Shown piece after piece: positions 15,272 through 50,941 of a stretch of 50,941 nucleotides of DNA. Source of the stretch: Octopus sinensis (Eukaryota). The stretch lies in assembly GCF_006345805.1 (NCBI RefSeq), contig NW_021834174.1, positions 1-50,941 of the forward strand, written 5' to 3'. A program made the position numbers and the translations under genes. How positions within the stretch are numbered: the stretch's first letter is position 1; every line of letters starts with the position of its first letter. Below the pieces are notes generated by a model. It had not been told where the DNA came from and searched no databases. It worked only from the letters and a program-made list of their open reading frames with translations.

Positions 15272-18050
15272 TATTACTCAAAGCCTTTGACGAAATAGAA
15301 GGGGATATAGCATCATATGATGTTGAAGACAACTGGAGGTTTCTACGGGACAACCTGCTGGGGGCCACTGACCAGATCTGTGGATGGTGCAAAGTCCCCT
15401 CTCGACCTAAGGTAACGGTGGTGGAACAGCATTGTTGACAGGGCTATTAGACAAAAGAAACAGGCTTGGAAGGACTGGAAGAGCGGTGGTAGCAGGGAAT
15501 TGTATCAGACTGCCAGAAGGGAAGCTAGGAGACAGGTTTATTTAGCCAGAGGGGAAGCAGATAAGAAAAAATTTGCCAATGTTCTGTGCCATGAAGACCA
15601 AAGACTTGAGGTATTTTGTGTTGCAAGACAGTGTGTGAGAGAGAATCGTGATGTCGTAGGAGAGAAATGTATCCGCATGAATGATGGTTCACTTGCATTA
15701 AACGAGACTGCAAAGAGAGAGGTTTGGAAATGCCACTATGAAAGGTTGTTCTTTAAAGAGAATGAATGGGAGAAAGAGAGTCTGCTGAATGTCGACCCAA
15801 CAGGGATCAGCTATCCGAGTTGACATACCTTGGTAGATAAAGCAATTAAGAGTATGAAGACAGGGAAAGCACCCAGCCCATCAGGAATCACCACAGAGAT
15901 ACTCAAAATATCTGGCAGTGTTGGCTATAGCCTAGTTACCTGTCTAGTTGACCAGGTGATACATGAAGGACTCATACCTATGACTGGTGTAGTAGCACTA
16001 TAGACAACTGCTACAAAAGTAAAGGTGACGCTTTAGATACAAATAATTATAGAAGTATTAAGTTGTTGGATCAGGTAATAAAGGTCACGGAGAGGGTCAT
16101 AGCCCAACTAATTAGGGAGAGAGTCAGTTTAGATGAGATGCTGCTTAGGTTCATGCTAGGGAAAAGCACCACTGATGCTATATTTCTGGTAAGACAGCTG
16201 CAGGAGAAATACCTAGCCAAAGATAAACCTCTGTACCTGGCTTTCGTTGACATGGAGAAAGCCTTTGACAGGGTCCTCCGATCCCTTATCTGGTGCTCAA
16301 TGAGGAAACTAGAGATAGATGAATGGTTAATGAGAGCTGTGCAAGCCACATACAGGGACACTGTCAGTAAGGTGAGGGTTGGCAACGAGTATAGAGAAGA
16401 ATTCCGAGTAGGGGTAGGGGTCCACCAAATATCTGTCCTTAGCTCCCGCTTATTCATCATAGTCCTCCAATCAATAACAGAGAAATTCAAGACATGATGC
16501 CCCTGGGAGCTCCTCTATGCTGATGACCTTGCTCTAATTAGTGAGTCACTATCAGAACTAGAGGAAAAGTTTCAGGTGTGGAAGCAAAGATTAGAATCGA
16601 AGGTCCTTAGAGTCAACCTAGCTAAAACCAAAGTCTTAATAAGTAGCAAGGCAGACAAATCACAAACACCTTCAGGTAGATGACCCTGCTCAATCTGTAG
16701 AAAAGGTGTAGGTAGAAACTATAAGATGTATCCAGTGTAAGCTATGGACACATAAGAGGTGCAGTAATATCAAAGGAAGGCTAACTGGGAAGATAGTTTT
16801 TGTATGTGGCAGATGCTCAGGTGCAATAACCACGGAAAATGCGCAGAGAACAGCTTCTGTCACATTCCAGGGAAAAAAACTAGAAGTAGTGGATAGCTTC
16901 CATTAACTAGGGGACCAAGTCAATAGCAGGGGTGGATGCTCTGATAGTGTAGCTGCTAGAATAAGAATAGCCTGGGCAAAGTTCAAAGAGCTCCTACTCC
17001 TGCTGGTGACAAAGGGCCTCTCACTCAGAGTAAAAGGTTGACTGTATGACGCATGTGTACAAACAGCCATGCTACATGGCAGTGAAACATGGACTGTGAC
17101 TGCTGAGGACATGGCTAAGCTTGCAAGGAATGAAGCCAGTATGCTCCACAGGATTTGTGATGTCTGTGCATACATGGGAGAAAAGTTGGTGTGCAGGAGA
17201 GATGACTGCGCTGCTATGGTCATGTGTTGCGAATGAATGAGGACAGCTGTGTGAAAAAGTGTTACACCCTAGCAGTTGAGAGAACCTGTGGAAGAGGTAG
17301 ACCCAGGAAAACCTGGGATGAGGTGGTGAAGCATGGCCTTCCAACATTGGATTTTACCGAGGCAATGACTAGTGACCGGGACCTTTACAGATATGCTGTG
17401 CTTGAGAAGACTCGACAAGCCAAGGGAAACCATGGCCTATGCCAGTGGATGTAACCAGCCCACTTAGGAATACTCATTCATTGGAAGATAAACCGAAGAA
17501 CTATTGAGGCAAGTGAAATCAAAATTGCTGATGCGGCCGACGACAGTACCGCCTGATTGGCACTCATGCCAGTGAAACGTTAAAAGCACATCCGAATGTG
17601 GGGTGTAACCAGGACACTTATGGGTACCCCTCATTCATTGGACAATGAACTTTGCTTGTGAAGACTTTTTGAGGCCAGTGAAAACAAACCACAATCGCTG
17701 ACGTGGCCGATGACAGTACCACTGATGCCAGTGGAAAGTTAAAAGCACATCCAAGCGTGATCGTTGCCAGGGCCATGGATTGGCTCCCGTGCCAGTGACA
17801 CATGAAAAACAACATTCAAGCATCATCATTGCCAGTGCCACCGGACTGGCTCCCATGCCGGTGGCACAAAAGAGGACTCAACTAGACTCTCGGAGTGGTT
17901 GGCATTAGGAAGGACATCCAGCTGTAGAAACATTGCCTGACCAGATTGAGCCAGGTGCAGCCTCTGGCTCACCAGTCCTCAGTCAAACCGTCCAACCCAT
18001 GACAGCATGGAAAGCGGACATTCAACGATGATGATGATGATGATGATGAG
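15272..18050 (+). mobile_element. Second, 5'-truncated and more decayed RTE copy with (GAT)n tail
   Basis: Colinear with 11500-14140; ORF fragments 15500..15823, 16063..16497 and 17224..17454; many stops. Confidence 0.92.
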
Positions 18051-18368: not shown

Positions 18369-19033
18369 GTCACTCAGCAAAATAATGATCATTGGACCCC
18401 TCTACATGTTGCCTCTTATCAAGGACACACAGACACAGCTAAACTTCTCCTACAACAAAAGGACACTGATGTGAGGGTGAAGGACAAAGATGGTTGGACA
18501 CCTCTACATCTTGCCTGTCAGAATGGACACACAGACACAGCTAAACTTCTCATACAACAAAAGGGCACTGATGTGAGGGTGGTGGGCAACAATGGTTGTA
18601 CACCTCTACATCTTGCCTCACTTCAAGGACACACAGACACAGCTAAACTTCTCCTACAACAAAATGGCACTGATGTGAGGGTGGTGGACAAAGATCGTTG
18701 GACACCTCTACATCTTGCCTCACTTCATGGACACACAGACACAGCTAAACTTCTCATACAACAAAAGGGCACTGATGTGAGTGTGGTGACCAACGATGGT
18801 TGGACACCTCTACATCTTGCCTCACTTCATGGACACACAGACACAGCTAAACTTCTCCTACAACAAAATGGCACTGATGTGAGGGTGGTGAGCAACGATG
18901 GTTGGACACCTCTACATCATGCCTCTTATAATGGACACACAGACACAGCTGAACTTCTCCTACGACAAAATGGCATCAATGCCAATAAAATGGACAATGA
19001 TGGTGACACTCCTCTCCATGTGGCAGTTCAAAA
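18369..19033 (+). CDS. Exon 4, six near-identical 34-aa ankyrin repeats plus the start of a seventh
   Basis: Acceptor ttttag at 18363-18368; phase 0 start; repeated WTPLHLA...GHTDTAKLL...GTDVRV; donor GTAAGT at 19034; overlaps ORF 18471..19037. Confidence 0.95.
18393..19004 (+). repeat. Intra-exonic tandem repeat, 6 x 102 bp
   Basis: Unit starts at 18393, 18495, 18597, 18699, 18801 and 18903 (exact 102-bp period). Confidence 0.95.
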
Positions 19034-19810
19034 GTAAGTCCCCAATGGATTTGGATTATCCAGATCTTTTTCTTTAATGTTTTCAATAACGTTTGTTTTC
19101 TTGTTTTGAGTCATTCATGTCATAATCCCACCATGGGACGTCGTGCTTCAACTCTCTCTCTCACACTCTAATGACACTGTAACCTACTTCATTAATTAAT
19201 CATCATAATTATTATTGTTGCTGTTGTTACCTGACTAGATTCTTACTTCATCTCATCCTTCGTTACCTCAACGTTACAAGTTCAAATCTTTCCTTTTCTT
19301 CTTTTCATTCCATATAAAACCCTCACCCCCTCTCTCTTATAATTTTCCTCTTTCCTCTGACCTGGGCTAAATGCAGAATCATTCCTTACAGTGTTTAGTT
19401 TGATCTGTTTATGTTCCAAGTTCAAATCCTGCCAGAGTATTTATTAACAGCCTGGAGTGAAAATCTGCACCAGTAATATCCAGGGGTTCATTTAATAAAT
19501 TGTCCTCCCTCTTTTCTCCTGTTTTTGTGTCTGATTGCTGTTGGGCAAAATACCTTGTGGTATTTATTTACCACACTTTATGTTCAGAGTTCAAATCCTG
19601 CTGAGGTCACCTTGTCCTTCCATCTTTGCTAGGCTAATAAAATACAATACCAGTCATGTACTGGGGTCCTTATAATCCACATTAACGCTTCTCCCCATCC
19701 TAAATTTCATGGCTATATAACAGTTGTTCATCATACCATATATAGATTGCTGTGTTTACTCAGGTGTGTATATCTATCGTTGGTCTATAATGTAGAGAGT
19801 ATATCGAATA

Positions 19811-28373: not shown

Positions 28374-29213
28374 GTAAGAACATTCTTTCTTGATCTGTCT
28401 GTTGTCTCATCAACTTTCTGGTATGGAATAATGCATTTCATATTGTAGTGGAGACATGCAACTCCTTGTTTGTAACTATATATGATTAACACTTGTTATA
28501 ATGTTTGCCATCCTTTTAGACATTTTATACTCACACTCGTTAGTTTTTAGATGTGATTAATGCTAAAAGAGACATTGTTTTCTGACTCTTTCACCTTTTG
28601 GCTTTACTTTTGAGTTGATTCGTTTTAATTCAAACATGAAGCCTGGTCCAAGGTAGTATCAGAAAGTTCAGACTAGTTCTGTAGCATGCCAACAGATGGC
28701 AGCACACCGTTGCGCGCACAGTGAGAGCTAGCAGTGACTTTCATGAGGCAGTGTGCTGGGTGACACCACTGCGTTTACTTCAAAAGTTGTGAAATTTGTG
28801 CTTTTGTAGTCATTTGTAGGCTGTAGTCTGCAATTTTCTAATGGTTAGGAACAAATAACCAATGTGAAATTTTGCGTTAAACTTGTCCAGCAAAGACATA
28901 AGAAAGAAACAACAAAACTAAGAGAAAAAGAGTGTTATGAAGTGATAACTAAGTGAGAGAATTTCAGAATTGTTAGATTAGTATATAGGATGTCTTAAGA
29001 GAAAGATGAGACTTAGAAAGGTTTGCCTATTTTGTTGTGGTTCTAAATATTGAATTATTATATAGTAACAGCTTAGAAAGTGTTGACCGAAAGCATAGTG
29101 GTCACCAATTGACTATTGATGATATGAATGCCTTACAATAATGGAATATAGATTATTAAACGAGACAAAGAAATTTTACTATGAAGTATAAAACTTTGAA
29201 ATGCTTATTTCAG

Positions 29214-29264
29214 TGTGTCCAAAGTCTGAAGAAGAAGCAGCCCAGGCAGTTGTAGAGCCTGTTG
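29214..29264 (+). CDS. Linker micro-exon 1 (VCPKSEEEAAQAVVEPV)
   Basis: ttatttcag acceptor and gtgagt donor; 51 nt, phase 1-1, open frame. Confidence 0.75.
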
Positions 29265-29379
29265 GTGAGTATAAAATAACTGTAATTGATTTCTATAAAT
29301 TTTACTTCCACCTAAAATATATTATTTGTGTGAATGTCTGAGAACAGGTTCAATTCCTAATTTCCAATTCTTATTTCAG

Positions 29380-29430
29380 TGTGTCCAAAGTCTGAAGACA
29401 AAGCAGTCCAGGCAGTTGTAGAGTCTGTTG
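29380..29430 (+). CDS. Linker micro-exon 2 (VCPKSEDKAVQAVVESV)
   Basis: Same splice signals; 51 nt; 166 bp after copy 1. Confidence 0.7.
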
Positions 29431-29545
29431 GTGAGTATAAAATAACTGTAATTGATTTCTATAAATTTTACTTCCACCTGAAATATATTATTTGTGTGAA
29501 TGTCTGAGAACAGGTTCAATTCCTAATTGCCAATTCTTATTTCAG

Positions 29546-29596
29546 TGTGTCCAAAGTCTGAAGACAAAGCAGTCCAGGCAGTTGTAGAGTCTGTTG
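29546..29596 (+). CDS. Linker micro-exon 3 (identical to copy 2)
   Basis: Same splice signals; 51 nt. Confidence 0.7.
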
Positions 29597-29711
29597 GTGA
29601 GTATAAAATAACTGTAATTGATTTCTATAAATTTTACCTTCACCTGAGATATATTATTTGTGTGAATGTCTGAGAACAGGTTCCATTCTTAATTTCCAAT
29701 TCTTATTTCAG

Positions 29712-29762
29712 TGTGTCCAAAGTCTGAAGAGAAAGCAGTCCAGGCGGTTGTAGAGTCTGTTG
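29712..29762 (+). CDS. Linker micro-exon 4 (VCPKSEEKAVQAVVESV)
   Basis: Same splice signals; 51 nt. Confidence 0.7.
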
Positions 29763-29877
29763 GTGAGTATAAAATAACTGTAATTGATTTCTATAAATTT
29801 TACCTTCACCTGAAATATATTATTTGTGTGAATGTCTGAGAACAGGTTCCATTCTTAATTTCCAATTCTTATTTCAG

Positions 29878-29926
29878 TGTGTCCAAAGTCTGAAGAAAGC
29901 AGCAAGGCGGTTGTAGAGTCTGTTTT
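29878..29926 (+). pseudogene. Linker micro-exon 5, 49 nt and frame-breaking as written (degenerate copy or sequence error)
   Basis: Splice signals are intact but the length is not a multiple of 3; several small indels relative to copy 4. Confidence 0.5.
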
Positions 29927-30039
29927 GTGAGTATAAAATAACTGTACTTGATTTCTATAATTTTACCTTCACCTGAATATATTATTTGTGTGAATGTCTG
30001 AGAACAGGTTCCATTCTTAATTTCCAATCCTTATTTCAG

Positions 30040-30090
30040 TGTGTCCGAGGTGTAGAGAGAAAGCAGTCAAGATGGTTGTAGAGTCTGTTG
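30040..30090 (+). CDS. Linker micro-exon 6 (VCPRCREKAVKMVVESV), diverged copy
   Basis: Same splice signals; 51 nt, phase 1-1. Confidence 0.7.
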
Positions 30091-30470
30091 GTGAGTATAA
30101 AATAACTGTAATTGATTTCTATAAATTTTAATTTCATCTGAAATATATTGTTTGTGTGAATGTCTGAGAACAGGTTGTAGGAAAGAAAAGACACAATGAA
30201 GAGAAAAACAGTTTTATCAAGTGATAATTGAATGAGATATTCGCAGAAATGTTAGATTATGTAGGCTGTCTTAATAGAGAGAGAAAAGGGGAGGAATTTA
30301 GGAAGGTTAGTCTATTTTGTGGTGTCCCTGAATATTGAGCTTTAACATGGTATCACCAGTTGACCATTGATAATAGGAATGCCTGACACTAATAAAATAT
30401 AGACTATTAAGAGAAATAATTTTTTAAAAATTTAACTATATATTGTAAAACTTTTAAATATTTATTTCAG

Positions 30471-35706: not shown

Positions 35707-36923
35707 ATTGGGTCATCCCATAAGTAATGCAGTGTTTTCAATTGTATGAACTAAAAGTCAGAGGGGGATGGGATAAACTATCTGCATCAACTTGCTATAA
35801 AAGCAGTACCTGTACTTATTCTTAGTGTGAGTTTTGAAGAGTGCAGTTAATTTTAACAGTTATTTTTTCAAAGCTATAATGGAAGTGACAAAGGCATATT
35901 CGAAATATTTTGCTTTGAGTTCAGTAAAGCAACAATGCAACAGAAGTGCGAGGAATATTAATGCAGTATATGGGGATTGGACAATAAGCGTAAGCCAGTG
36001 TCAATGGTGGTCTCAGAAGTTCCGAGCTGGAAACTACAGCCAAGAAGATCAACTTTGTTCTGGAAGATATGTAGAGCTTGGACGAGGACATCCTACAACC
36101 CTGGTGGAACAAAATCCCATTGTAACTAGCAGAGAAGCTTGGATTCGGTCCATTCAGCAGCCATTCATCGATACTTGCATGGTATTGGAAAAATCAGCAA
36201 TTGGGTCAATGGATTGCACACAGAGTAAATGTGTGCTCTTCTCTGCTGCCATGTCTCATGAATGAACCTCTTTTGAACTGAATAGTGACTGGTGATGAGA
36301 AAAGGGTTCTCTATAAATACGTTATGCACCAAAGACAGTGGGTAGGGAAAGGAGAAATACTGGCACTCCAGAATAAAAAAAGTCTCTACCCACGTAAGGT
36401 GCTGTTATCTGTTTGGTGGGATATGAAAGGTTTGGTCCACTTTGAACTTTTAAACCCTAACCAAACAATAACTAAGGAGATCTACTGCAAGCAGCTTGAG
36501 CGGCTTAAGTCAGTGCTAGAAGAAAAACGACCATCTTCAGTTTCAAGACGAAAGGTGTTCTTCCATCAGGATAATGTTCAATCACATAGAGTGAGGATGA
36601 CATTCCAAAGGCTGGAGCAGTTTGAATGAGAAACAATTCCCCACCCACCATATTCACCAGTCATTGCCCCATCTTCAAACTTATTTGGATGTAAAAAATA
36701 TGTTACCTGTAGATGAGGTCAGAACGGTAGTAGAGAAGTAATTTTTGTCATGGACAAGTCAATTTTGGAAGAGGGGCCTTGCAAGTGCACCAGATAGATG
36801 GAAGAGCATTGTAGAAAATGATAGAGAGTATATTTTAGGTTAAAAAAGAACTTTGTTTATCTTAATTTTGAAGAATAAAAGATGTATAAAACAAATGCAT
36901 TATTATTTATAGGATGACCCAAT
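35707..36923 (+). mobile_element. Decayed mariner (Tc1/mariner, DD34D-like) transposon
   Basis: TIRs attgggtcatcccataagtaatgc / gcattattatttataggatgacccaat; ORF pieces with HTH, TGDEKRVLY, HQDNVQSH and PPYSPVIAPS. Confidence 0.88.
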
Positions 36924-39806: not shown

Positions 39807-40752
39807 TGGGCCCTTATTGTTCTTAGTCTTCATAAGTGACTTGCCTGACGACCTCACGCAACACACCCTTCTATTTGCCGACGATGTCAAACTGGTCGCT
39901 CCTCGCGGTGATATAGAGGATCTTCGTCGATGTCTCCACCAAATTTGGAGGTGGTCTAACGAATGGGACCTGTGTCTGAACGTGTCAAAGTGCTGTCATC
40001 TGCCTGTTGGCTCTACTCCTGCAACTCAACTTGATTTTGAGCCGGGTCGTCTGCTGCTGGAGAGGACCGATCAGGTAAAGGACCTGGGTATCTTGGTGGA
40101 TTCCTCCTTTTCGCCTTTGTCCCAGTGCGTCCATGCTGCCAACAAAGCACGCGGAATTCTGTTCTTGATTCGACGGTCATTCGGAATGCTCACAGCAGCC
40201 ATATTCCTACCACTCTATGTCATGCTGGTGAGACCCATACTGGAGTACAGGATTCAAGACTCTTCTCCTTATCTCCTCAAAGACATACGGCATCTCGAAA
40301 GAGTCCAGAAGCTGGCTACCCGCATGGTTCATGGTCTCAAAAATTTGTCTTATGAAGAAAGGCTGAGGACGCTCGACCTTTATTCTCTAGAAAAACGGCG
40401 CCGCCGTGGTGATCTCATTCTCGCCCACAACATCAGTGTAACCTCTCGAAAAAGCTGTTCTTCACTCCTGCTCCAGAGCGTCGGCTGCGGGGTCATTCAG
40501 AAAAGCTCTACCTGCGACGATTTCATCTCAATCGAAGGAGAGGAGCTTTCTCCGTCCGGGTTGCGGATCCGTGGAACAAGCTGCCAGACGAGATGATGAA
40601 GATGCCGACGACCGCTTTGTTCAAAGTCTCCCTTGACCTCAAGTGGCCTGAACTCTTTACATGAACACCACCCTGTACTTAACTCCATGTCCCCCTACAT
40701 GGCCTTGCTATTTGCTTTTGAGCCAAATTAACTAACTAACTAACTAACTAAC
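39807..40752 (+). mobile_element. 5'-truncated CR1/L2-group LINE (RT C-terminus) with (CTAA)n tail
   Basis: ORF 39817..40596: FADDVKL, KDLGILVD, LVRPILEY, LERVQKLATRMV, YEERL, LEKRRRRGDLI; tail actaactaactaac. Confidence 0.9.
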
Positions 40753-41554: not shown

Positions 41555-41668
41555 GTGCTGTACATATATATATGTATGTATGTGTGTGTGTGTGTTGGTG
41601 TATGCAAATACATACATACATATATATATTATATATATATATATATATGTAATGATGTATGTATTTGC

Positions 41669-41700
<32 letters not shown>

Positions 41701-41802
41701 TATATTATATATTATGTATATAATATATATATGTATATATATATATATGTATACTATATATGTATATTATATATATGTATATATATATATACATATATAT
41801 AT

Positions 41803-41881
<79 letters not shown>

Positions 41882-41918
41882 ATATATTATACATATATAT
41901 ATACATATATATATATAC

Positions 41919-41953
<35 letters not shown>

Positions 41954-41966
41954 ATATATATATACC

Positions 41967-41997
<31 letters not shown>

Positions 41998-42277
41998 CTA
42001 TATATAATATTATACATATATATAATATATATATACATATATATACACATATATATATCATACATATTAATATATACATATACATATATATACATATATA
42101 TATATACATATACATATATATACATATACATTATATACATATATCATATATATACATATACATATATATACATATACATATATATATATACATATATATA
42201 TATACATATACATATATATATACATATATATATATATACATATACAATATATATATATATATATATATATACATAAC

Positions 42278-42325
<48 letters not shown>
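41555..42325. repeat. Long interrupted (TA)n/(TACA)n microsatellite, left flank of the hammerhead array
   Basis: Direct inspection; the Y/I-rich ORFs here are artefacts. Confidence 0.98.
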
Positions 42326-42327
<2 letters not shown>

Positions 42328-42519
42328 AAGCAATAGGGTTTAGCAACGAGTTGCCTTACCACATATCGAATTTAGAAATAGCAGTCAAAGGGTTATAGCT
42401 ATTTCTTCTACTAAAAAGGGAGATCTCAGTAAAAACAGCATTTGGAAGGCAGACACAAACAGGTAAGAGGGAATGAATCGACTGCAATCTATCATACATT
42501 TTTTTAGTTATCCACGGAC
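42326..42519 (-). repeat. Inverted partial copy of the array unit at the 5' end of the array
   Basis: Reverse complement of gtccgtggataac...gttgctaaaccct(t)attgct, with 4 substitutions and 1 indel versus the array consensus. Confidence 0.95.
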
Positions 42520-45500
42520 AAACCCTTATTGCTTAGTATTACTTAAATTTTCCTCGAATGAGGCTTTTACATGCCGAAGACTACTTGGTGTAATTGATAA
42601 TTTTTCCAAATTAATTAATTTCACCCTTCATTATTACGGATAACCATATTTTATCTCAGTAGATGACCACAGCATCTTGTTTTGGCTACACGCGGGTGGG
42701 AAGGGGCTGTTGACACAATCGTTTCATTCACAAATTGAATTCGGTGATACCAGTTGCGGATTCTAGCTCGCTCTGATACTGAGTTGAGTTGGTGCCTTCT
42801 GGTATCTCAAAATTCAATATATAATCATTTATGATTATAGTATTCTACGCTGAAGAGAAAAGAAGTTTCGGTAAGATAGAATTATTTATTATTTAATATT
42901 TAATATTAGTTCTTATGCTTTCCTAAAAACTTGATTTCGAAACGTACGTCCGTGGATAACTAAAAAAATGTATGATAGATTGCAGTCAATTCATTCTCTC
43001 TTACCTGTTTGTGTCTGCCTTCCAAATGCTGTTTTTACTGAGATCTCCCTTTTTAGTAGAAGAAAGAGCTATAACCCTTTGACTGCTATTTCTAAATTCG
43101 GTATGTGGTAAGGCAACTCGTTGCTAAACCCTTATTGCTTAGTATTACTTAAATTTTCCTCGAATGAGGCTTTTACATGCCGAAGACTACTTGGTGTAAT
43201 TGATAATTTTTCCAAATTAATTAATTTCACCCTTCATTATTACGGATAACCATATTTTATCTCAGTAGATGACCACAGCATCTTGTTTTGGCTACACGCG
43301 GGTGGGAAGGGGCTGTTGACACAATCGTTTCATTCACAAATTGAATTCGGTGATACCAGTTGCGGATTCTAGCTCGCTCTGATACTGAGTTGAGTTGGTG
43401 CCTTCTGGTATCTCAAAATTCAATATATAATCATTTATGATTATAGTATTCTACGCTGAAGAGAAAAGAAGTTTCGGTAAGATAGATTATTTATTATTTA
43501 ATATTTAATATTTAGTTCTTATGCTTTCCTAAAAACTTGATTTCGAAATGTACGTCCGTGGATAACTAAAAAAATGTATGATAGATTGCAGTCAATTCAT
43601 TCTCTCTTACCTGTTTGTGTCTGCCTTCCAAATGCTGTTTTTACTGAGATCTCCCTTTTTAGTAGAAGAAATAGCTATAAAACCTTTGACTGCTATTTCT
43701 AAATTCGGTATGTGGTAAGGCAACTCGTTGCTAAACCCTTATTGCTTAGTATTACTTAAATTTTCCTCGAATGAGGCTTTTACATGCCGAAGACTACTTG
43801 GTGTAATTGATAATTTTCCAAATTAATTAATTTCACCCTTCATTATTACGGATAACCATATTTTATCTCAGTAGATGACCACAGCATCTTGTTTTGGCTA
43901 CACGCGGGTGGGAAGGGGCTGTTGACACAATCGTTTCATTCACAAATTGAATTCGGTGATACCAGTTGCGGATTCTAGCTCGCTCTGATACTGAGTTGAG
44001 TTGGTGCCTTCTGGTATCTCAAAATTCAATATATAATCATTTATGATTATAGTATTCTACGCTGAAGAGAAAAGAAGTTTCGGTAAGATAGAATTATTTA
44101 TTATTTAATATTTATATTCGTCTTATGCTTTCCTAAAAACTTGATTTCGAAACGTACGTCCGTGGATAACTAAAAAAATGTATGATAGATTGCAGTCAAT
44201 TCATTCTCTCTTACCTGTTTGTGTCTGCCTTCCAAATGCTGTTTTTACTGAGATCTCCCTTTTAGTAGAAGAAATAGCTATAACCCTTTGACTGCTATTT
44301 CTAAATTCGGTATGTGGTAAGGCAACTCGTTGCTAAACCCTTATTGCTTAGTATTACTTAAATTTTCCTCGAATGAGGCTTTTACATGCCGAAGACTACT
44401 TGGTGTAATTGATAATTTTTCCAAATTAATTAATTTCACCCTTCATTATTACGGATAACCATATTTTATCTCAGTAGATGACCACAGCATCTTGTTTTGG
44501 CTACACGCGGGTGGGAAGGGGCTGTTGACACAATCGTTTCATTCACAAATTGAATTCGGTGATACCAGTTGCGGATTCTAGCTCGCTCTGATACTGAGTT
44601 GAGTTGGTGCCTTCTGGTATCTCAAAATTCAATATCTAATCATTTATGATTATAGTATTCTAGCTCTGAGAGAAAAAAAGTTTCGGTAAGATAGAATTAT
44701 TTATTATTAATATTTAATATTTAGTTCTTATGCTTTCCTAAAAACTTGATTTCGAAACGTACGTCCGTGGATAACTAAAAAAATGTATGATAGATTGCAG
44801 TCAATTCATTCTCTCTTACCTGTTTGTGTCTGCCTTCCAAATGCTGTTTTTACTGAGATCTCCCTTTTTAGTAGAAGAAATAGCTCTAAACCTTTGACTG
44901 CTATTTCTAAATTCGGTATGTGGTAAGGCAACTCGTTGCTAAACCCTTATTGCTTAGTATTACTTAAATTTTCCTCGAATGAGGCTTTTACATGCCGAAG
45001 ACTACTTGGTGTAATTGATAATTTTTCCAAATTAATTAATTTCACCCTTCATTATTACGGATAACCATATTTTATCTCAGTAGATGACCACAGCATCTTG
45101 TTGGGCTACACGCGGTGGGAAGGGGCTGTTGACACAATCGTTCATTCACAAATTGAATTCGGTGATACCAGTTGCGGATTCTAGCTCGCTCTGATACTGA
45201 GTTGAGTTGGTGCCTTCTGGTATCTCAAAATCAATATATAATCATTTATGATTATAGTATTCTACGCTGAAGAGAAAAGAAGTTTCGGTAAGATAGAATT
45301 ATTTATTATTTAATATTTAATATTTAGTTCTTATGCTTCTTCCTAAAAAACTTGATTCGAAACGTACGTCCGTGGATAACTAAAAAATTGTATGATAGAT
45401 TGCAGTCAATTCATTCTCTCTTACCTGTTTGTGTCTGCCTTCCAAATGCTGTTTTTACTGAGATCTCCCTTTTTAGTAGAAGAAATAGCTATAACCCTTT

Positions 45501-48500
45501 GACTGCTATTTCTAAATTCGGTATGTGGTAAGGCAACTCGTTGCTAAACCCTTATTGCTTAGTATTACTTAATTTTCCTCGAATGAGGCTTTTACATGCC
45601 GAAGACTACTTGGTGTAATTGATAATTTTTCCAAATTAATTAATTTCACCCTTCATTACTACTACGGATAACCATATTATCTCAATAGATGACCACAGCA
45701 TCTTGTTTTGGCTACACGCGGGTGGAAGGGCTGTTGACACAATCGTTTCATTCACAAATTGAATTCGGTGATACCAGTTGCGGATTGCTAGCTCGCTCTG
45801 ATACTGAGTTGAGTTGGTGCCTTCTGGTATCTCAAAATTCAATATATAATCATTTATGATTATAGTATTCTACGCTGAAGAGAAAAGAAGTTTCGGTAAG
45901 ATAGAATTATTTATTATTTTTAATATTTAATATTTAGTTCTTATGCTTTCCTAAAAAACTTGATTTCGAAACGTACGTCCGTGGATAACTAAAAAAATGT
46001 ATGATAGATTGCAGTCAATTCATTCTCTCTTACCTGTTTGTGTCTGCCTTCCAATGCTGTTTTTACTGAGATCTCCCTTTTAGTAGAAGAAATAGCTATA
46101 ACCCTTTGACTGCTATTTCTAAATTCGGTATGTGGTAAGGCAACTCGTTGCTAAACCCTTATTGCTTATATTACTTAATTTTCCTCGAATGAGGCTTTTA
46201 CATGCCGAAGACTACTTGGTGTAATTGATAATTTTTCCAAATTAATTAATTTCACCCTTCATTATTACGGATAACCATATTTTATCTCAGTAGATGACCA
46301 CAGCATCTTGTTTTGGCTACACGCGGGTGGGAAGGGGCTGTTGACACAATCGTTTCATTCACAAATTGAATTCGGTGATACCAGTTGCGGATTCTAGCTC
46401 GCTCTGATACTGAGTTGAGTTGGTGCCTTCTGGTATCTCTCAAAATCCATATATAATCATTTATGATTATAGTTTCTACGCTGAAAGAAAAGAAGTTTCG
46501 GTAAGATAGAATTATTTATTATTTAATATTTAATATTTAGTTCTTATGCTTTCCTAAAAAACTTGATTTCGAATGTACGTCCGTGGATAACTAAAAAAAT
46601 GTATGATAGATTGCAGTCAATTCATTCTCTCTTACCTGTTTGTGTCTGCCTTCCAAATGCTGTTTTTACTGAGATCTCCCTTTTAGTAGAAGAATAGCTA
46701 TAACCCTTTGACTGCTATTTCTAAATTCGGTATGTGGTAAGGCAACTCGTTGCTAAACCCTTATTGCTTAGTATTACTTAAATTCCTCGAATGAGGCTTT
46801 TACATGCCGAAGACTACTTGGTGTAATTGATAATTTTTCCAAATTAATTAATTCACCCTTCATTATTACGGATAACCATATTTTATCTCAGTAGATGACC
46901 ACAGCATCTTGTTTTGGCTACACGCGGGTGGAAGGGGCTGTTGACACAATCGTTTCATTCACAAATTGAATTCGGTGATACCAGTTGCGGATTCTAGCTC
47001 GCTCTGATACTGAGTTGAGTTGGTGCCTTCTTGGTATCTGTCAAAATTCAATATATAATCATTTATGATTATAGTATTCTACGCTGAAGAGAAAAGAAGT
47101 TTCGGTAAGATAGAATTATTTATTATTTAATATTTAATATTTAGTTCTATGCTTTCCTAAAAAACTTGATTTCGAAACGTACGTCCGTGGATAACTAAAA
47201 AAATGTATGATAGATTGCAGTCAATTCATTCTCTCTTACCTGTTTGTGTCTGCCTTCCAAATGCTGTTTTTACTGAGATCTCCCTTTTTAGTAAAGAAAT
47301 AGCTATAACCACTTTGACTGCTATTTCTAAATTCGGTATGTGGTAAGGCAACTCGTTGCTAAACCCTTATTGCTTAGTATTACTTAAATTTTCCTCGAAT
47401 GAGGCTTTTACATGCCGAAGACTACTTGGTGTAATTGATAATTTTTCCAATTAATTAATTTCACCCTTCATTTTACGGATAACCATATTTTATCTCAGTA
47501 GATGACCACAGCATCTTGTTTTGGCTACACGCGGGTGGGAAGGGGCTGTTGACACAACATCGTTTCATTCACAATTGAATTCGGTGATACCAGTTGCGGA
47601 TTCTAGCTCGCTCTGATACTGAGTTGAGTTGGTGCCTTCTGGTATCTCACAATTCAATATATAATCATTTATGATTATAGTATTCTACGCTGAAGAGAAA
47701 AGAAGTTCGGTAAGATAGAATTATTTATTATTAATATTTAATATTTAGTTCTTATGCTTTCCTAAAAAACTTGATTTCGAAACGTACGTCCGTGGATAAC
47801 TAAAAAAATGTATGATAGATTGCAGTCAATTCATTCTCTCTTACCTGTTTTGTCTGCCTTCCAAATGCTGTTTTTACTGAGATCTCCCTTTTTAGTAGAA
47901 GAAATAGCTATAACCCTTTGACTGCTATTTCTAAATTCGGTATGTGGTAAAACTCGTTGCTAAACCCTTATTGCTTAGTATTACTTAATTTTCCTCGAAT
48001 GAGGCTTTTACATGCCGAAGACTACTTGGTGTAATTGATAATTTTCCAAATTAATAATTTCACCCTTCATTAACGGATAACCATATTTTATCTCAGTAGA
48101 TGACCACAAGCATCTTGTTTTGGCTACACGCGGGTGGGAGGGGCTGTTGACACAATCGTTTCATTCACAAATTGAATTCGGTGATACCAGTTGCGGATTC
48201 TAGCTCGCTCTGATACTGAGTTGATTGGTGCCTTCTGGTATCTCAAAATTCAATATAAATCATTTATGATTATAGTATTCTACGCTGAAGAGAAAAGAAG
48301 TTTCGGTAAGATAGAATTATTTATTATTTAATATTTAATATTTAGTTCTTATGCTTTCCTAAAAAACTTGATTTCGAAACGTACGTCCGTGGATAACTAA
48401 AAAAATGTATGATAGATTGCAGTCAATTCATTCTCTCTTACCTGTTTGTGTCTGCCTTCCAAATGCTGTTTTTACTGAGATCTCCCTTTTTAGTAGAAGA

Positions 48501-49895
48501 AATAGCTATAACCCTTTGACTGCTATTTCTAAATTCGGTATGTGGTAAGGCAACTCGTTGCTAAACCCTTATTGCTTAGTATTACTTAAATTTTCCTCGA
48601 ATGAGGCTTTTACATGCCGAAGACTACTTGTGTAATTGATAATTTTTCCAAATTAATTAATTTCACCCTTCATTATTACGGATAACCATATTTTATCTCA
48701 GTAGATGACCACAGCATCTTGTTTTGGCTACACGCGGGTGGGAAGGGGCTGTTGACACAATGTTTCATTCACAAATAATTCGGTGATACCAGTTGCGGAT
48801 TCTAGCTCGCTCTGATACTGAGTTGAGTTGGTGCCTTCTGGTATCTCAAAATTCAATATATAATCATTTATGATTATAGTATTCTACGCTGAAGAGAAAA
48901 GAAGTTTCGGTAAGATAGAATTATTTATTATTTAATATTAATATTTAGTTCTTATGCTTTCCTAAAAAACTTGATTTCGAAATGTACGTCCGTGATAACT
49001 AAAAAAATGTATGATAGATTGCAGTCAATTCATTCTCTCTTACCTGTTTGTGTCTGCCTTCCAAATGCTGTTTTTACTGAGATCTCCCTTTTTAGTAGAA
49101 GAAATAGCTATAACCCTTTGACTGCTATTTCTAAATTCGGTATGTGGTAAGGCAACTCGTTGCTAAATCCTTATTGCTTAGTATTACTTAAATTTTCCTC
49201 GAATGAGGCTTTTACATGCCGAAGACTACTTGGTGTAATTGATATTTTTCCAAATTAATTAATTTCACCCTTCATTATTACGGATAACCATATTTTATCT
49301 CAGTAGATGACCACAGCATCTTGTTTTGGCTACACGCGGGTGGGAAGGGGCTGTTGACACAATCGTTTCATTCACAAATTGAATTCGGTGATACCAGTTG
49401 CGGATTCTAGCTCGCTCTGATACTGAGTTGAGTTGGTGCCTTCTGGTATCTCAAAATTCAATATATAATCATTTATGATTATAGTATTCTACGCTGAAGA
49501 GAAAAGAAGTTTCGGTAAGATAGAATTATTTATTATTTAATATTTAATATTTAGTTCTTATGCTTTCCTAAAAAACTTGATTTCGAAATGTACGTCCGTG
49601 GATAACTAAAAAAATGTATGATAGATTGCAGTCAATTCATTCTCTCTTACCTGTTTGTGTCTGCCTTCCAAATGCTGTTTTTACTGAGATCTCCCTTTTT
49701 AGTAGAAGAAATAGCTATAACCCTTTGACTGCTATTTCTAAATTCGGTATGTGGTAAGGCAACTCGTTGCTAAACCCTTATTGCTTAGTATTACTTAAAT
49801 TTTCCTCGAATGAGGCTTTTACATGCCGAAGACTACTTGGTGTAATTGATAATTTTTCCAATTAATTAATTTCACCCTTCATTATTACGGATAAC
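42520..49895 (+). repeat. Tandem array of ~605-bp units (~12.2 copies), each with a hammerhead ribozyme motif; retrozyme/Penelope-like satellite
   Basis: aaacccttatt at 42520 and 43126 (606 bp). GTC cleavage triplets end at 42950, 43556, 44160, 44765, 45370, 45979, 46581, 47185, 47790, 48387, 48990 and 49596. Confidence 0.97.
42844..42956 (+). ncRNA. Type I minimal hammerhead ribozyme (first of 12 array copies)
   Basis: Helix I tctacg/cgtgga; core CTGAAGA at 42850-42856; helix II gaaaagaagttt/aaacttgatttc (10 of 12 pairs) extended by an AT-rich hairpin; GAAA at 42939-42942; helix III AC/GT with palindromic ACGTACGT; cleavage triplet GTC at 42948-42950. Confidence 0.85.
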
Positions 49896-50090
49896 TATAT
49901 ATATATACATATATATATAATATATATATATATATAATACACATATATACATATATAGATACATATATATACATATATATACATATTATATACAATATAT
50001 ATATTATATATATATATATATATAATGTCTATATAATATATATATGAATAATATATACATATATATTACATATATATATATATATATATA
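49896..50090. repeat. (TA)n microsatellite, right flank of the hammerhead array
   Basis: Direct inspection. Confidence 0.97.
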
Positions 50091-50941
50091 TTTTCACTGT
50101 TCAAGAACAGCAACAGCTAGAAAATCAGCAGCCACAACACAACACAGAATGAGCCACTCCTGGTTCCCAGCACAATGGCTGACCCTAACATCGGTCAAGC
50201 ACAACACCACAACAGCCACTCCTCAACTCTAGCATACTAGACGATTCACTAAATGCCAGTATCTTTTCACCGCTCTCACGGCAACCCCACAATTATCATC
50301 ATCATCATCACCACCGCTGCACCATCGTCTTCTATCACCAAAAAACAAAAAGGAAACCACTGCTCTCTTCCCCCACATCACCACCTCAATACCACTGCAG
50401 TAACAAAAACTTAAAGAAACATAGAAGCAGAATGCGCCCCCCACGGCACAAACAAGAAACCCAGAATATGCCGCTATTCACTGCGCCAGAGACTCTGCAC
50501 AAATAGTGACTGCATCTTCACGCATCTACCCGGCACTAGACGCACTACCGCCAAGGCCAAAGCACGCATCCCACAATAACATCAACACCCCACCAAATAG
50601 TAAATCGAAATTCAAAACACACACAACTTGGAGTCCCAAAATCTGCCGGTATTCCCAACGTGAGAGAACATGTCTGCTGAGTGACTGTCCCTTCACTCAT
50701 CTTCCAGGGACCCGACGCACAAACAGAAACGGGGCTTCAAGCCACACACAACCTGAATAAAAATAAAAATAGAAACACACCATGCTGCAGTAATGCTGGT
50801 CCAGTATTTCAGGAAGACACAAAAAACAACAACAACAAAAGTGGAAACTACAAACCTATCCACAGTGCAACCACACCTCCAGCCAAAAACTGCACCCTAA
50901 GCAGGAAAAATTCTTTTTTGGCCATGTTGAACATGGCAAAA

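What the first reader, a model, noticed from the sequence alone, without database searches (positions are those of the whole stretch)
42520..49895. 7.4-kb tandem array of ~605-bp units, each carrying a minimal type I hammerhead ribozyme (candidate retrozyme)
Seen: each unit has tctacg-CTGAAGA-[gaaaagaagttt...aaacttgatttc]-GAAA-c-gtac-GTC-cgtgga, giving a full hammerhead core, a 6-bp helix I, a long helix II and a 2-bp helix III whose loop makes the palindrome ACGTACGT. There are 12 copies and no long ORF. Established: minimal type I hammerheads with a short palindromic helix III occur in Penelope-like elements, newt satellite 2 and metazoan non-LTR retrozymes. They cleave as dimers, and tandem transcripts are processed into monomeric linear or circular RNAs. 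Inference: transcription of this array would give ~605-nt monomers or circles, longer than the few-hundred-nt metazoan retrozymes I know, possibly an undescribed cephalopod family.
Basis: partly seen in the sequence, partly recalled or inferred. Interest (0 to 1): 0.92.

Follow-up and report, generated by a model that had tools for sequence, protein, structure and literature searches.

The report
Hammerhead-ribozyme tandem repeat (animal retrozyme array)
A 7.4-kb block of twelve near-identical ~605-bp repeats, each carrying a self-cutting hammerhead RNA motif, looks like a known type of parasitic "retrozyme" element, and its insertion scars suggest that Penelope-type retrotransposon enzymes put it there.

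Summary
Window 42520-49895 is a head-to-tail array of 12.2 units of 597-609 bp, 98-99.8% identical. Each unit carries a type I hammerhead: helix I 6 bp, CUGAAGA, helix II 4 bp plus a long extension, GAAA, helix III 2 bp with a GUAC loop, and GUC. Ten of 12 cores are intact. Shuffled sequence gave no match to the motif. Rfam Hammerhead_1 aligns over its full length but scores below threshold (16.2 vs 34 bits) because of an 80-nt insertion in helix II.

- A 194-bp inverted partial copy (42326-42519) lies head-to-head with the array. Its inner end is 3 nt from the predicted cleavage site.
- (TA)n microsatellite flanks both sides.
- The + strand monomer RNA is unusually stable (z -4.9 to -6.6, against -1.5 to -1.9 for the - strand), and a natural two-ribozyme transcript folds unconstrained into the double hammerhead.

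An inverted truncated copy, a tandem array and a (TA)n target together are the published signature of Penelope-like element insertion.

Verdict: a new member of a known kind, the metazoan non-LTR retrozyme. The 605-nt size is not exceptional, since published consensus lengths run 51-972 bp. The host taxon, expression, cleavage and circles remain untested.

The parts
41608..42325 (.). Upstream (AT)n microsatellite, 718 bp, imperfect. This is the left half of the presumed target site.
   Evidence: TRF period 2, 364 copies. It abuts the outer end of the inverted copy with ATA/GTAT microhomology.
42326..42519 (-). Inverted, ribozyme-less partial copy of the unit, covering unit offsets -2 to about +192/195 relative to the cleavage site. 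It lies head-to-head with the direct array. Its inner end is the G of the GUC triplet.
   Evidence: Inverted repeats I1-I6, 185 nt at 97-98% to units; junction reading. It has 4 private substitutions against a mean of 0.5 per direct unit over the same stretch, P about 0.002.
42520..49895 (+). Direct head-to-tail array of 12.2 units of about 605 bp. It starts at unit offset +176 (AAACCCTTATTGC...) and ends at offset +299 (...CGGATAAC).
   Evidence: GC 34.5%. No ORF above 68 aa.
42844..42956 (+). Hammerhead 1, intact; predicted cleavage between 42950 and 42951.
   Evidence: fold recovers helices I and II.
43450..43562 (+). Hammerhead 2, intact; helix III has U-G (GAAAUGUACGUC).
44056..44166 (+). 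Hammerhead 3, intact.
44660..44771 (+). Hammerhead 4, defective as assembled: core reads CUGAGAG and the helix I 5' strand is altered.
   Evidence: fails both descriptors.
45261..45376 (+). Hammerhead 5, core intact; the base of helix II is shortened to 3 bp by a 1-nt deletion.
   Evidence: (relaxed only).
45869..45985 (+). Hammerhead 6, intact.
46475..46587 (+). Hammerhead 7, defective as assembled: CUGAAAG and GAA instead of GAAA.
   Evidence: fails both descriptors.
47078..47191 (+). Hammerhead 8, intact. It pairs with hammerhead 9 in the predicted double hammerhead.
47684..47796 (+). Hammerhead 9, intact.
48279..48393 (+). Hammerhead 10, intact. This is the copy that Rfam Hammerhead_1 aligns to over its full length.
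   Evidence: RF00163, 16.2 bits, E=0.18.
48883..48996 (+). Hammerhead 11, core intact; the helix I 3' strand has a 1-nt deletion (4 bp left); U-G in helix III.
   Evidence: (relaxed only).
49488..49602 (+). Hammerhead 12, intact; U-G in helix III.
49896..50091 (.). Downstream (TA)n microsatellite, 196 bp. This is the right half of the presumed target site.
   Evidence: TRF period 2, 102 copies. Junction GGATAAC|TATATA where the unit continues CATAT.

Best explanation
This is a non-coding, non-autonomous retroelement of the metazoan 'non-LTR retrozyme' kind: a tandem array of ~605-bp units, each encoding a type I hammerhead on the + strand.

Proposed life cycle (inferred):
1. The array is transcribed on the + strand into a multimer. 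The promoter is unknown; it could be internal or read-through.
2. Neighbouring ribozymes pair through the self-complementary ACGUACGU to make an 8-bp shared helix III, with helix I strands swapped (a double hammerhead).
3. Each core cuts after GUC, releasing ~605-nt monomers with 5'-OH and 2',3'-cyclic phosphate ends.
4. The monomers fold into a compact, highly paired structure. By analogy with other retrozymes, a host tRNA ligase may circularise them.
5. Such RNA is copied into DNA by a Penelope-like element (PLE) reverse transcriptase/GIY-YIG endonuclease at a (TA)n microsatellite.

Proposed origin of this locus (inferred): both target strands primed on UAU-type microhomology. One cDNA gave the direct copies. 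The other primed about 195 nt into the RNA, ran to within 3 nt of the ribozyme-cut 5' end and gave the inverted piece. This is a twin-priming-like geometry. The direct part probably expanded or was homogenised in place afterwards.

Shown here: array, motif, chance level, folds, junction anatomy. Inferred: transcription, cleavage, circularisation, PLE dependence, order of events.
For: Motif:
- A full core, the G10.1-C11.1 and A15.1-U16.1 pairs, and the 6/4/2-bp helix layout are present in 10 of 12 units.
- There were no strict matches in 300 shuffles of 44 kb on both strands.
- Rfam Hammerhead_1 aligns end to end in the same register. Only an 80-nt helix II insertion keeps it under threshold.
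- The layout equals the 'canonical metazoan type I' of PMC4209133.

Dimer: cofolding two ribozyme domains gives -54.2 kcal/mol against 2 x -20.9. The unconstrained MFE of the natural 743-nt stretch 47070-47812 pairs the two palindromes with each other and swaps the helix I strands.

RNA-level signal: the + strand monomer has MFE -156 to -160 kcal/mol and z -4.9 to -6.6, with 0 of 60 or 20 shuffles as stable. The - strand has z -1.5 to -1.9. The global fold keeps helices I and II.

Retrozyme criteria met: tandem, non-coding, GC 34.5%, self-paired RNA (PMC7229834).

Insertion anatomy:
- An inverted truncated copy abuts the array head-to-head, and (TA)n lies on both sides.
- Craig et al. 2021 describe exactly this for PLEs: partial tandems, an inverted 5'-truncated copy upstream, and (TA)n targets.
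- The inner end of the inverted copy is 3 nt from the cleavage site. The chance of lying within +/-3 nt is about 7/605, or 1%.
- Its outer end (offset +192/195) overlaps the start of the direct array (offset +176) by 17-20 nt, as in twin priming.
- The inverted copy is about 8 times more diverged than the direct units, which points to later in-place expansion or homogenisation.
Against: - There is no experimental or transcript evidence of any kind.
- Rfam is below gathering score.
- The base of helix II is weak: one G-C, three A-U, then A.A and G.G mismatches.
- The isolated 125-nt ribozyme domain is not more stable than shuffles (z -1.05).
- There is no covariation: 18 pairs, 0 compensatory changes, because the copies are nearly identical.
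- No other family member was found in the window or in the metagenome and prokaryote-genome scans. Mobility therefore rests on one locus.
- No PLE RT/GIY-YIG gene is in the window.
- The inverted copy runs 3 nt past the cleavage site, so its template was not simply a cleaved 5' end.
- Target-site duplications cannot be read in a microsatellite.
Confidence: 0.75

Rival explanations
1. The whole 12-unit array was made in one retrotransposition event. Either the reverse transcriptase ran round a ~605-nt circular RNA (rolling circle), or it copied a long uncleaved multimeric transcript. Under this reading there was no later expansion in place.
For: The units are 98-99.8% identical, and almost all variants are singletons in a star-like pattern. 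Rolling-circle or more-than-unit reverse transcription has been proposed for PLEs and retrozymes (PMC4209133 discussion; abstract of 10.64898/2026.07.22.740005). The overlap between the outer end of the inverted copy and the start of the direct array fits a single template.
Against: The inverted copy has 4 substitutions in 192 nt against a mean of 0.5 in the direct units (P about 0.002). That is unexpected if all the DNA is the same age and came from one template. A block-wise shared variant suggests local duplication: the A-run length at alignment column 602 differs between the first four units and the rest. A circle has no 5' end that would stop the inverted cDNA near the cleavage site.
Confidence: 0.3
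2. This is an ordinary satellite repeat that happens to contain a hammerhead-like string. The RNA, if any is made, does not self-cleave, and the array grew only by unequal crossing-over.
For: Rfam is below threshold. Helix II has a weak AU-rich base and is unusually long at about 85 nt. There is no covariation and there are no relatives. Two of 12 cores are damaged. In a Gb-sized genome a few chance descriptor matches are expected, and a satellite would multiply one of them.
Against: Shuffles gave 0 strict and 0.02 relaxed matches per 88 kb. The motif also has features that were not in the descriptor: the G10.1-C11.1 pair, the palindromic loop 3, internal loops exactly 6 bp (helix I) and 4 bp (helix II) from the core, and an MFE double hammerhead. 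RNA stability is strand-specific to the ribozyme strand. The insertion anatomy is PLE-like, with a breakpoint 3 nt from the cleavage site.
Confidence: 0.08
3. The repeat is not an independent non-autonomous family. It is the amplified terminal repeat (pLTR) of a 5'-truncated autonomous Penelope-like element that inserted here and then became a local satellite.
For: PLE insertions are usually heavily 5'-truncated and carry the HHR in the pLTR. The 2026 preprint proposes this exact route for the birth of retrozyme arrays.
Against: There is no RT or GIY-YIG coding remnant in the array, in the inverted piece or anywhere in the window. The hammerhead has the canonical retrozyme-type layout, not the PLE min-HHR layout. 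The two readings differ mainly in history, not in mechanism.
Confidence: 0.12
4. Copy number, and some of the 'mutations', are artefacts of assembling a long tandem repeat from noisy long reads.
For: Most inter-unit differences are singleton 1-nt indels, many of them in homopolymers, plus a few scrambled 5-7-nt patches.
Against: The junctions with unique inverted sequence and with the microsatellites are clean. An artefact would change the copy number, not the existence of the unit or its ribozyme.
Confidence: 0.1

Closest known systems
Metazoan non-LTR retrozymes (Acropora, Mytilus and axolotl families; Cervera & de la Pena 2020, PMC7229834)
   Same: Both are head-to-tail tandem repeats, each with a type I hammerhead. 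Both are non-coding and AT-rich, with no LTR, PBS or PPT. The monomer RNA is predicted to be highly self-paired. A short palindromic helix III implies dimeric cleavage, as in the amphibian families.
   Different: The unit is 605 bp, against 170-400 nt in that paper, although it is inside the 51-972 bp range of the 2026 vertebrate survey. Helix II does not end in a small loop 2; it continues for about 70 more nt. Expression and circles have not been shown. The host taxon is unknown.
Hammerhead motifs in the pseudo-LTRs of Penelope-like elements, and PLE insertion architecture (Cervera & de la Pena 2014, PMC4209133; Craig et al. 2021, PMC8557442)
   Same: The locus has an inverted truncated copy head-to-head with direct tandem copies, insertion into (TA)n, and a hammerhead close to the unit boundary.
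   Different: There is no RT/GIY-YIG ORF. The ribozyme has the canonical 6/4/2-bp layout rather than the PLE 'min-HHR' (helix II 7-8 bp, helix I 4-5 bp, no helix III). There are twelve full repeats rather than a partial tandem.
Classical hammerhead satellites: newt satellite 2, Schistosoma Sm-alpha, cave-cricket pDo500 (recalled from my own knowledge; not fetched here)
   Same: These are tandem genomic repeats a few hundred bp long that are transcribed and self-cleave into monomers through type I hammerheads. The newt ribozyme works as a double hammerhead through a weak helix III.
   Different: There is no detectable sequence relationship. The unit is longer and helix II is much larger. No tRNA-like part was found. 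snRNA-type promoter elements were not searched for.
Plant LTR retrozymes (Cervera et al. 2016, PMC4918200)
   Same: They are non-autonomous, ribozyme-processed elements giving 600-1000-nt circular RNAs, similar in size to this monomer.
   Different: The plant elements have type III hammerheads inside LTRs, with PBS, PPT and 4-bp TSDs, and depend on Gypsy-type elements. None of those features is present here.

Membership tests
Hammerhead ribozyme, type I (Rfam RF00163) | Conserved core CUGANGA ... GAAA ... cleavage triplet NUH | tested here: met
   CUGAAGA, GAAA and GUC are present in 10 of 12 units. Units 4 and 7 are damaged.
Hammerhead ribozyme, type I (Rfam RF00163) | Three helices around the core with helix I open, plus the G10.1-C11.1 and A15.1-U16.1 pairs | tested here: met
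   Helix I 6 bp, helix II 4 bp + internal loop + 6 bp + extension, helix III 2 bp. 98% of cells are paired, against 13-55% when the partners are slid by 1-3 columns.
Hammerhead ribozyme, type I (Rfam RF00163) | Score at or above Rfam's gathering threshold (34 bits) | tested here: not met
   16.2 bits, E=0.18 in a 136-nt search. The alignment is full length with an 80-nt insertion in helix II. There was no hit in the wider searches.
Hammerhead ribozyme, type I (Rfam RF00163) | Compensatory changes in the helices among family members | tested here: inconclusive
   There are 0 compensatory pairs in 12 near-identical copies and only one one-sided change, C-G to U-G in 4 units. No outside relatives were found.
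Hammerhead ribozyme, type I (Rfam RF00163) | Site-specific self-cleavage | not testable with these tools
   This needs in vitro transcription of 1- and 2-unit constructs.
Metazoan non-LTR retrozyme | Head-to-tail tandem repeats of up to a few hundred bp, each with a type I HHR | tested here: met
   12.2 units of 597-609 bp. This is above the 150-450 bp of PMC7229834 but within the 51-972 bp of the 2026 survey.
Metazoan non-LTR retrozyme | Non-coding, no LTRs, GC below 50% | tested here: met
   The largest ORF is 68 aa. The flanks are microsatellite, not LTRs. GC is 34.5%. PBS and PPT were not specifically searched for.
Metazoan non-LTR retrozyme | Monomer RNA predicted to be stable and highly self-paired | tested here: met
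   The + strand has z -4.9 to -6.6; the - strand has z -1.5 to -1.9.
Metazoan non-LTR retrozyme | Expressed as linear and circular monomer RNAs | not testable with these tools
   No transcriptome of the unknown source organism is available here.
Metazoan non-LTR retrozyme | Dispersed at several genomic loci (mobile) | not testable with these tools
   Only one locus lies in the 51-kb window. The public collections on hand gave no copy.
PLE-mobilised (Penelope-like) insertion | Direct tandem copies with an adjacent inverted 5'-truncated copy | tested here: met
   The inverted 194-bp piece 42326-42519 lies head-to-head with the array. The feature is as described in PMC8557442.
PLE-mobilised (Penelope-like) insertion | Microsatellite, especially (TA)n, target | tested here: met
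   (AT)n at 41608-42325 and (TA)n at 49896-50091. That bias is documented mainly for Naiad and suggested for Neptune.
PLE-mobilised (Penelope-like) insertion | Sequence similarity of the unit to the pLTR of an autonomous PLE in the same genome | not testable with these tools
   The source genome is not available, and there is no PLE in the window.
Autonomous Penelope-like element | ORF with telomerase-like RT and GIY-YIG endonuclease | tested here: not met
   The array has no ORF above 68 aa. The RTs in the window are LINE-type, with an APE endonuclease.
PLE 'min-HHR' (Cervera & de la Pena 2014) | Helix II 7-8 bp, helix I 4-5 bp, no helix III or loop 3 | tested here: not met
   Here helix I is 6 bp, helix II is 4 bp before the first internal loop, and helix III is 2 bp with a 4-nt loop. 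That is the 'canonical metazoan' layout.

The most novel reading that the evidence does not exclude
The locus may be a fossil of the retrozyme integration reaction itself. In this reading one ribozyme-processed + strand RNA was copied from both nicked strands of a (TA)n target (twin priming). The inverted piece then records the RNA's 5' end at the hammerhead site, and the 17-20-nt overlap records the second priming site. That would be direct structural evidence, outside vertebrates, that hammerhead cleavage defines the 5' end of the transposition intermediate and that retrozymes use the PLE integration pathway. A secondary point is that a hammerhead with an ~85-nt helix II escapes Rfam, so this class may be under-counted in genome surveys.
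Probability: 0.3. Interest if true: 0.6.

Novelty: new member of a known kind. Interest (0 to 1): 0.4.

Why it matters
Hammerhead retrozymes are abundant producers of circular RNA in animals. How they are mobilised is still argued mostly from co-occurrence and phylogeny with Penelope-like elements; the 2026 preprint states that it covers vertebrates only and offers limited life-cycle evidence.

This locus adds three things:
- A clean example whose ends can be read: a (TA)n target, microhomology at both 3' ends, and an inverted piece ending 3 nt from the ribozyme cut. This makes the 'PLE machinery acting on ribozyme-processed RNA' model testable genome-wide in the source species.
- An example showing that standard covariance-model screens miss hammerheads with a long helix II.
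- No paper in the searchable library reports hammerhead repeats in cephalopods. If the host is a cephalopod, the family would be a first record for that group.

None of this changes the known picture of what retrozymes are.

Tried and rejected
- Rfam at gathering threshold on the whole window and at E<=10 on 2.7 kb gave no hammerhead. Only the 136-nt search showed the sub-threshold full-length match. The MH_s25, mir-4875 and HYMAI matches are noise (E 1.6-4.2, far below their gathering scores).
- TRF missed the array because its longest period is 500.
- The source organism was not identified. There was no exact-protein look-up for the LINE RT. The best LINE RT relatives are 58-81% identical, with named hits from a hydrozoan and a clam. 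Ankyrin ORF relatives are <=59% identical. The contigs behind two hits carry only sample codes.
- A 25-nt pattern from the ribozyme/unit junction found nothing in JGI metagenomes or GTDB genomes. A gapped core pattern found one contig, L003. That hit is a chance match in a stretch that reads as an open coding frame (my own reading of the sequence; no protein search was run), with no helix I and no tandem repeat.
- ARAGORN found no tRNA-like (SINE-type) part. The bacterial promoter scanner was not used because it does not apply to an animal genome.
- The covariation count inside the array is uninformative.
- The 166-bp repeat at 29200-30176 also contains CTGAAGA in every unit. It was rejected as a second ribozyme repeat because it has no matching GAAA/helix context. 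It looks like a duplicated mini-exon instead.
- A circular-fold shuffle run exceeded the time limit. It was replaced by linear folds.

Full report

Yes. Direct-repeat families with start-to-start spacings of 595-609 bp tile window 42520-49895. TRF missed the array only because its longest period is 500.

Anchoring on the string GAAAYGTACGTC and its one degenerate copy gives twelve predicted cleavage sites. The first base after GUC lies at 42951, 43557, 44161, 44766, 45371, 45980, 46582, 47186, 47791, 48388, 48991 and 49597. Site-to-site units measure 606, 604, 605, 605, 609, 602, 604, 605, 597, 603 and 606 bp. They are 97.8-99.8% identical over aligned columns. The array is therefore 12.2 units long.

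Nearly all differences are singletons, mostly 1-nt indels. Only five alignment columns have a variant shared by two or more units. The largest ORF is 68 aa and GC is 34.5%.

**2. The hammerhead**

Each unit reads UCUACG-CUGAAGA-G[...85 nt...]C-GAAA-C-GUAC-G-UC|CGUGGA.
- Helix I is 6 bp (U-A, C-G, U-G, A-U, C-G, G-C). The fold extends it by a 2x2 internal loop and 4 more pairs.
- Helix II starts with G10.1-C11.1 and three A-U pairs. An A.A/G.G internal loop follows, then 6 more pairs and an AU-rich imperfect hairpin.
- Helix III is A15.1-U16.1 plus C-G, with loop GUAC. Together these make the DNA palindrome ACGTACGT in 8 units and ATGTACGT (U-G) in 4.

A descriptor scan that I wrote finds the motif in 8 of 12 units under strict settings and 10 of 12 under relaxed settings. 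It finds nothing else in the window on either strand. Units 4 and 7 have damaged cores, and units 5 and 11 have weakened helices. Given the indel-type noise between units, some of this damage may be assembly error.

The motif is very unlikely to be a chance match. Across 300 dinucleotide shuffles of a 44-kb non-redundant window, both strands, the strict descriptor gave 0 hits and the relaxed one 0.02 per shuffle. It gave 0 hits in 3000 shuffles of a unit.

Rfam reports nothing at gathering threshold or in a 2.7-kb E<=10 search. On 136 nt its best hit is RF00163 Hammerhead_1. It places 80 nt where the model expects 10 in helix II. The shortfall therefore comes from the insertion, not from the core.

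The 6 bp / 4 bp / 1-2 bp plus palindromic-loop layout is what Cervera & de la Pena 2014 describe as the canonical metazoan type I hammerhead, which works as a dimer (PMC4209133). It is not their PLE 'min-HHR'. In this copy the internal loops sit 6 bp (helix I) and 4 bp (helix II) from the core, which is where loops 1 and 2 make tertiary contacts in canonical ribozymes. That these loops play that role is my inference.

**3. Folding**

Two copies of the 123-nt ribozyme domain cofold at -54.2 kcal/mol, against 2 x -20.9 for the monomers. The two copies share an 8-bp intermolecular helix III, and the helix I strands are swapped.

More tellingly, the unconstrained MFE of the natural 743-nt stretch 47070-47812, which holds two successive ribozymes, is exactly this double hammerhead. 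Enforcing the palindrome pairing does not change the energy.

The monomer cut out at the predicted sites is far more stable than shuffles on the + strand:
- MFE -155.9, z -6.6, 0 of 20 shuffles as stable
- MFE -159.4 and -160.5, z -4.9 and -5.3, 0 of 60 shuffles as stable

The - strand is not (z -1.5, -1.9 and -1.9). A difference of about 33 kcal/mol between strands points to G-U pairs, and so to constraint at the RNA level on the ribozyme strand.

The isolated 125-nt domain alone is not significantly stable (z -1.05). A covariation count inside the array is uninformative: 18 pairs, none compensatory.

**4.

Immediately left of the array, 42326-42519 is an inverted copy of part of the unit, 185 nt at 97-98% identity.

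Read in the unit's own sense, this piece starts at the G of the GUC triplet, 2 nt before the scissile bond. Three nucleotides, GUC, precede the cleaved 5' end. It runs to offset +192, or +195 if a GTAT shared with the microsatellite is counted. It contains no ribozyme.

The direct array starts at offset +176. The two parts are therefore head-to-head and share 17-20 nt of unit sequence. The direct array ends at offset +299, as GGATAAC|TATATA where the unit continues CATAT.

Both outer ends therefore lie at UAU/AUAU-type microhomology to the flanks. The flanks are (AT)n, 718 bp, on the left and (TA)n, 196 bp, on the right.

Craig et al. 2021 describe this architecture as typical of Penelope-like elements: partial tandems, an inverted 5'-truncated copy immediately upstream, and a strong microsatellite, notably (TA)n, target bias (PMC8557442).

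The geometry is also what twin priming gives for LINE-1. In twin priming the outer end of the inverted segment roughly matches the inner start of the direct segment, and the inner end of the inverted segment marks the 5' end of the template. This comparison rests on my own knowledge of Ostertag & Kazazian 2001, which I did not fetch.

The chance that an arbitrary breakpoint falls within +/-3 nt of the cleavage site is about 7/605, or 1%. The 3 extra nucleotides mean the template was not simply a cleaved 5' end. I have no firm explanation for them.

**5. History of the array**

Over the shared 192 nt, the inverted piece has 4 private substitutions, against a mean of 0.5 per direct unit (Poisson P about 0.002). 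The first four units also share an A-run length that differs from the other eight.

I therefore favour a smaller original insertion followed by expansion or homogenisation in place. A single rolling-circle or long-multimer event is the main rival (confidence about 0.3).

**6. Context**

The window comes from an animal genome rich in repeats.
- A LINE with APE endonuclease, RT and a PHD-like finger lies at 10858-13659, with a degraded copy at 16063-16497.
- Mariner remnants lie at 35834-36629.
- A LINE-type RT fragment lies at 39817-40596.
- An ankyrin-repeat ORF lies at 18471-19037.

There is no PLE gene and no other copy of the unit in the window. The source taxon could not be established. 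No relatives of the unit turned up in the collections available. The one gapped-pattern hit is a chance match.

**7. Comparison with what is known**

The locus meets every sequence-level criterion of metazoan non-LTR retrozymes (PMC7229834): tandem type I hammerheads, no coding capacity, no LTRs, low GC and a self-paired monomer.

Its size is above the 170-400 nt of that paper. It lies inside the 51-972 bp range (mean 650 bp in ray-finned fishes) reported by Li, Clavereau & Pollet 2026, who also argue that retrozymes are non-autonomous PLE derivatives.

The features that could not be tested are expression, circles, cleavage, dispersal and a matching PLE.

Two details are unusual: the ~85-nt helix II, which hides the ribozyme from Rfam, and the legible insertion scars.

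No paper in the searchable library reports hammerhead repeats in cephalopods or squid. The host here is unverified.

**8. Verdict**

This is a new member of a known kind. It is not trivial, because the junction anatomy offers a concrete, testable picture of how such arrays are seeded.

Noticed in passing
window 29200-30176: A 166-bp tandem repeat of 5.9 copies. Each unit has tttcag | 51 nt | gtgagt, and the 51 nt are open in one frame (CPKSEDKAVQAVVESV, with amino-acid-changing differences between copies). It looks like a tandemly duplicated mini-exon plus intron of a + strand gene. It also carries CTGAAGA in each unit but is not a hammerhead.
   Followed up: partly
window 18392-19037: A 102-bp repeat of 5.7 copies at 90% identity encodes ankyrin repeats in ORF 18471-19037 (Pfam Ank, E 1e-55). 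The closest proteins in the 5.8-billion-sequence collection are only <=59% identical.
   Followed up: partly
window 10858-13659 and 16063-16497: A LINE with APE-type endonuclease, RT and a PHD-like finger is split into three ORFs, and a degraded second copy lies 3 kb downstream. RT relatives are 58-81% identical. Named hits include Hydractinia and Mercenaria, and one hit is mislabelled as a Herbaspirillum MAG protein.
   Followed up: partly
window 35834-36629: Mariner/Mos1-type transposase remnants (HTH_48 and Transposase_1 domains) lie in two adjacent ORFs.
   Followed up: no
window 39817-40596: A 259-aa ORF holds the C-terminal part of a LINE-type reverse transcriptase (FADD motif), 2 kb upstream of the (AT)n tract. 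It is not a Penelope-type RT.
   Followed up: no
window 42520-49895: Differences between units are mostly singleton 1-nt indels, often in homopolymers, plus a few scrambled 5-7-nt patches. This pattern suggests long-read assembly noise, so the 'dead' ribozymes of units 4 and 7 may not be real.
   Followed up: partly
window 42968-43111 and the same offset in six other units: A 47-aa ATG ORF recurs at unit offset 18-161 in 7 of 12 units. There is nothing to suggest it is coding.
   Followed up: no
window 18471-49895, + strand: The ankyrin ORF, the mini-exon repeat and the ribozyme strand of the array are all on the + strand. If the array sits in an intron of that gene, host read-through could supply the multimeric transcript. 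No gene model was built.
   Followed up: no
L003 6001-6113 (JGI contig Ga0307516_10007748): This is the only metagenome match to the gapped core pattern. It lies in a stretch that I read by eye as an open coding frame resembling an adenosine deaminase; no protein search was run. It has no helix I and no tandem repeat, so it is a chance hit.
   Followed up: yes
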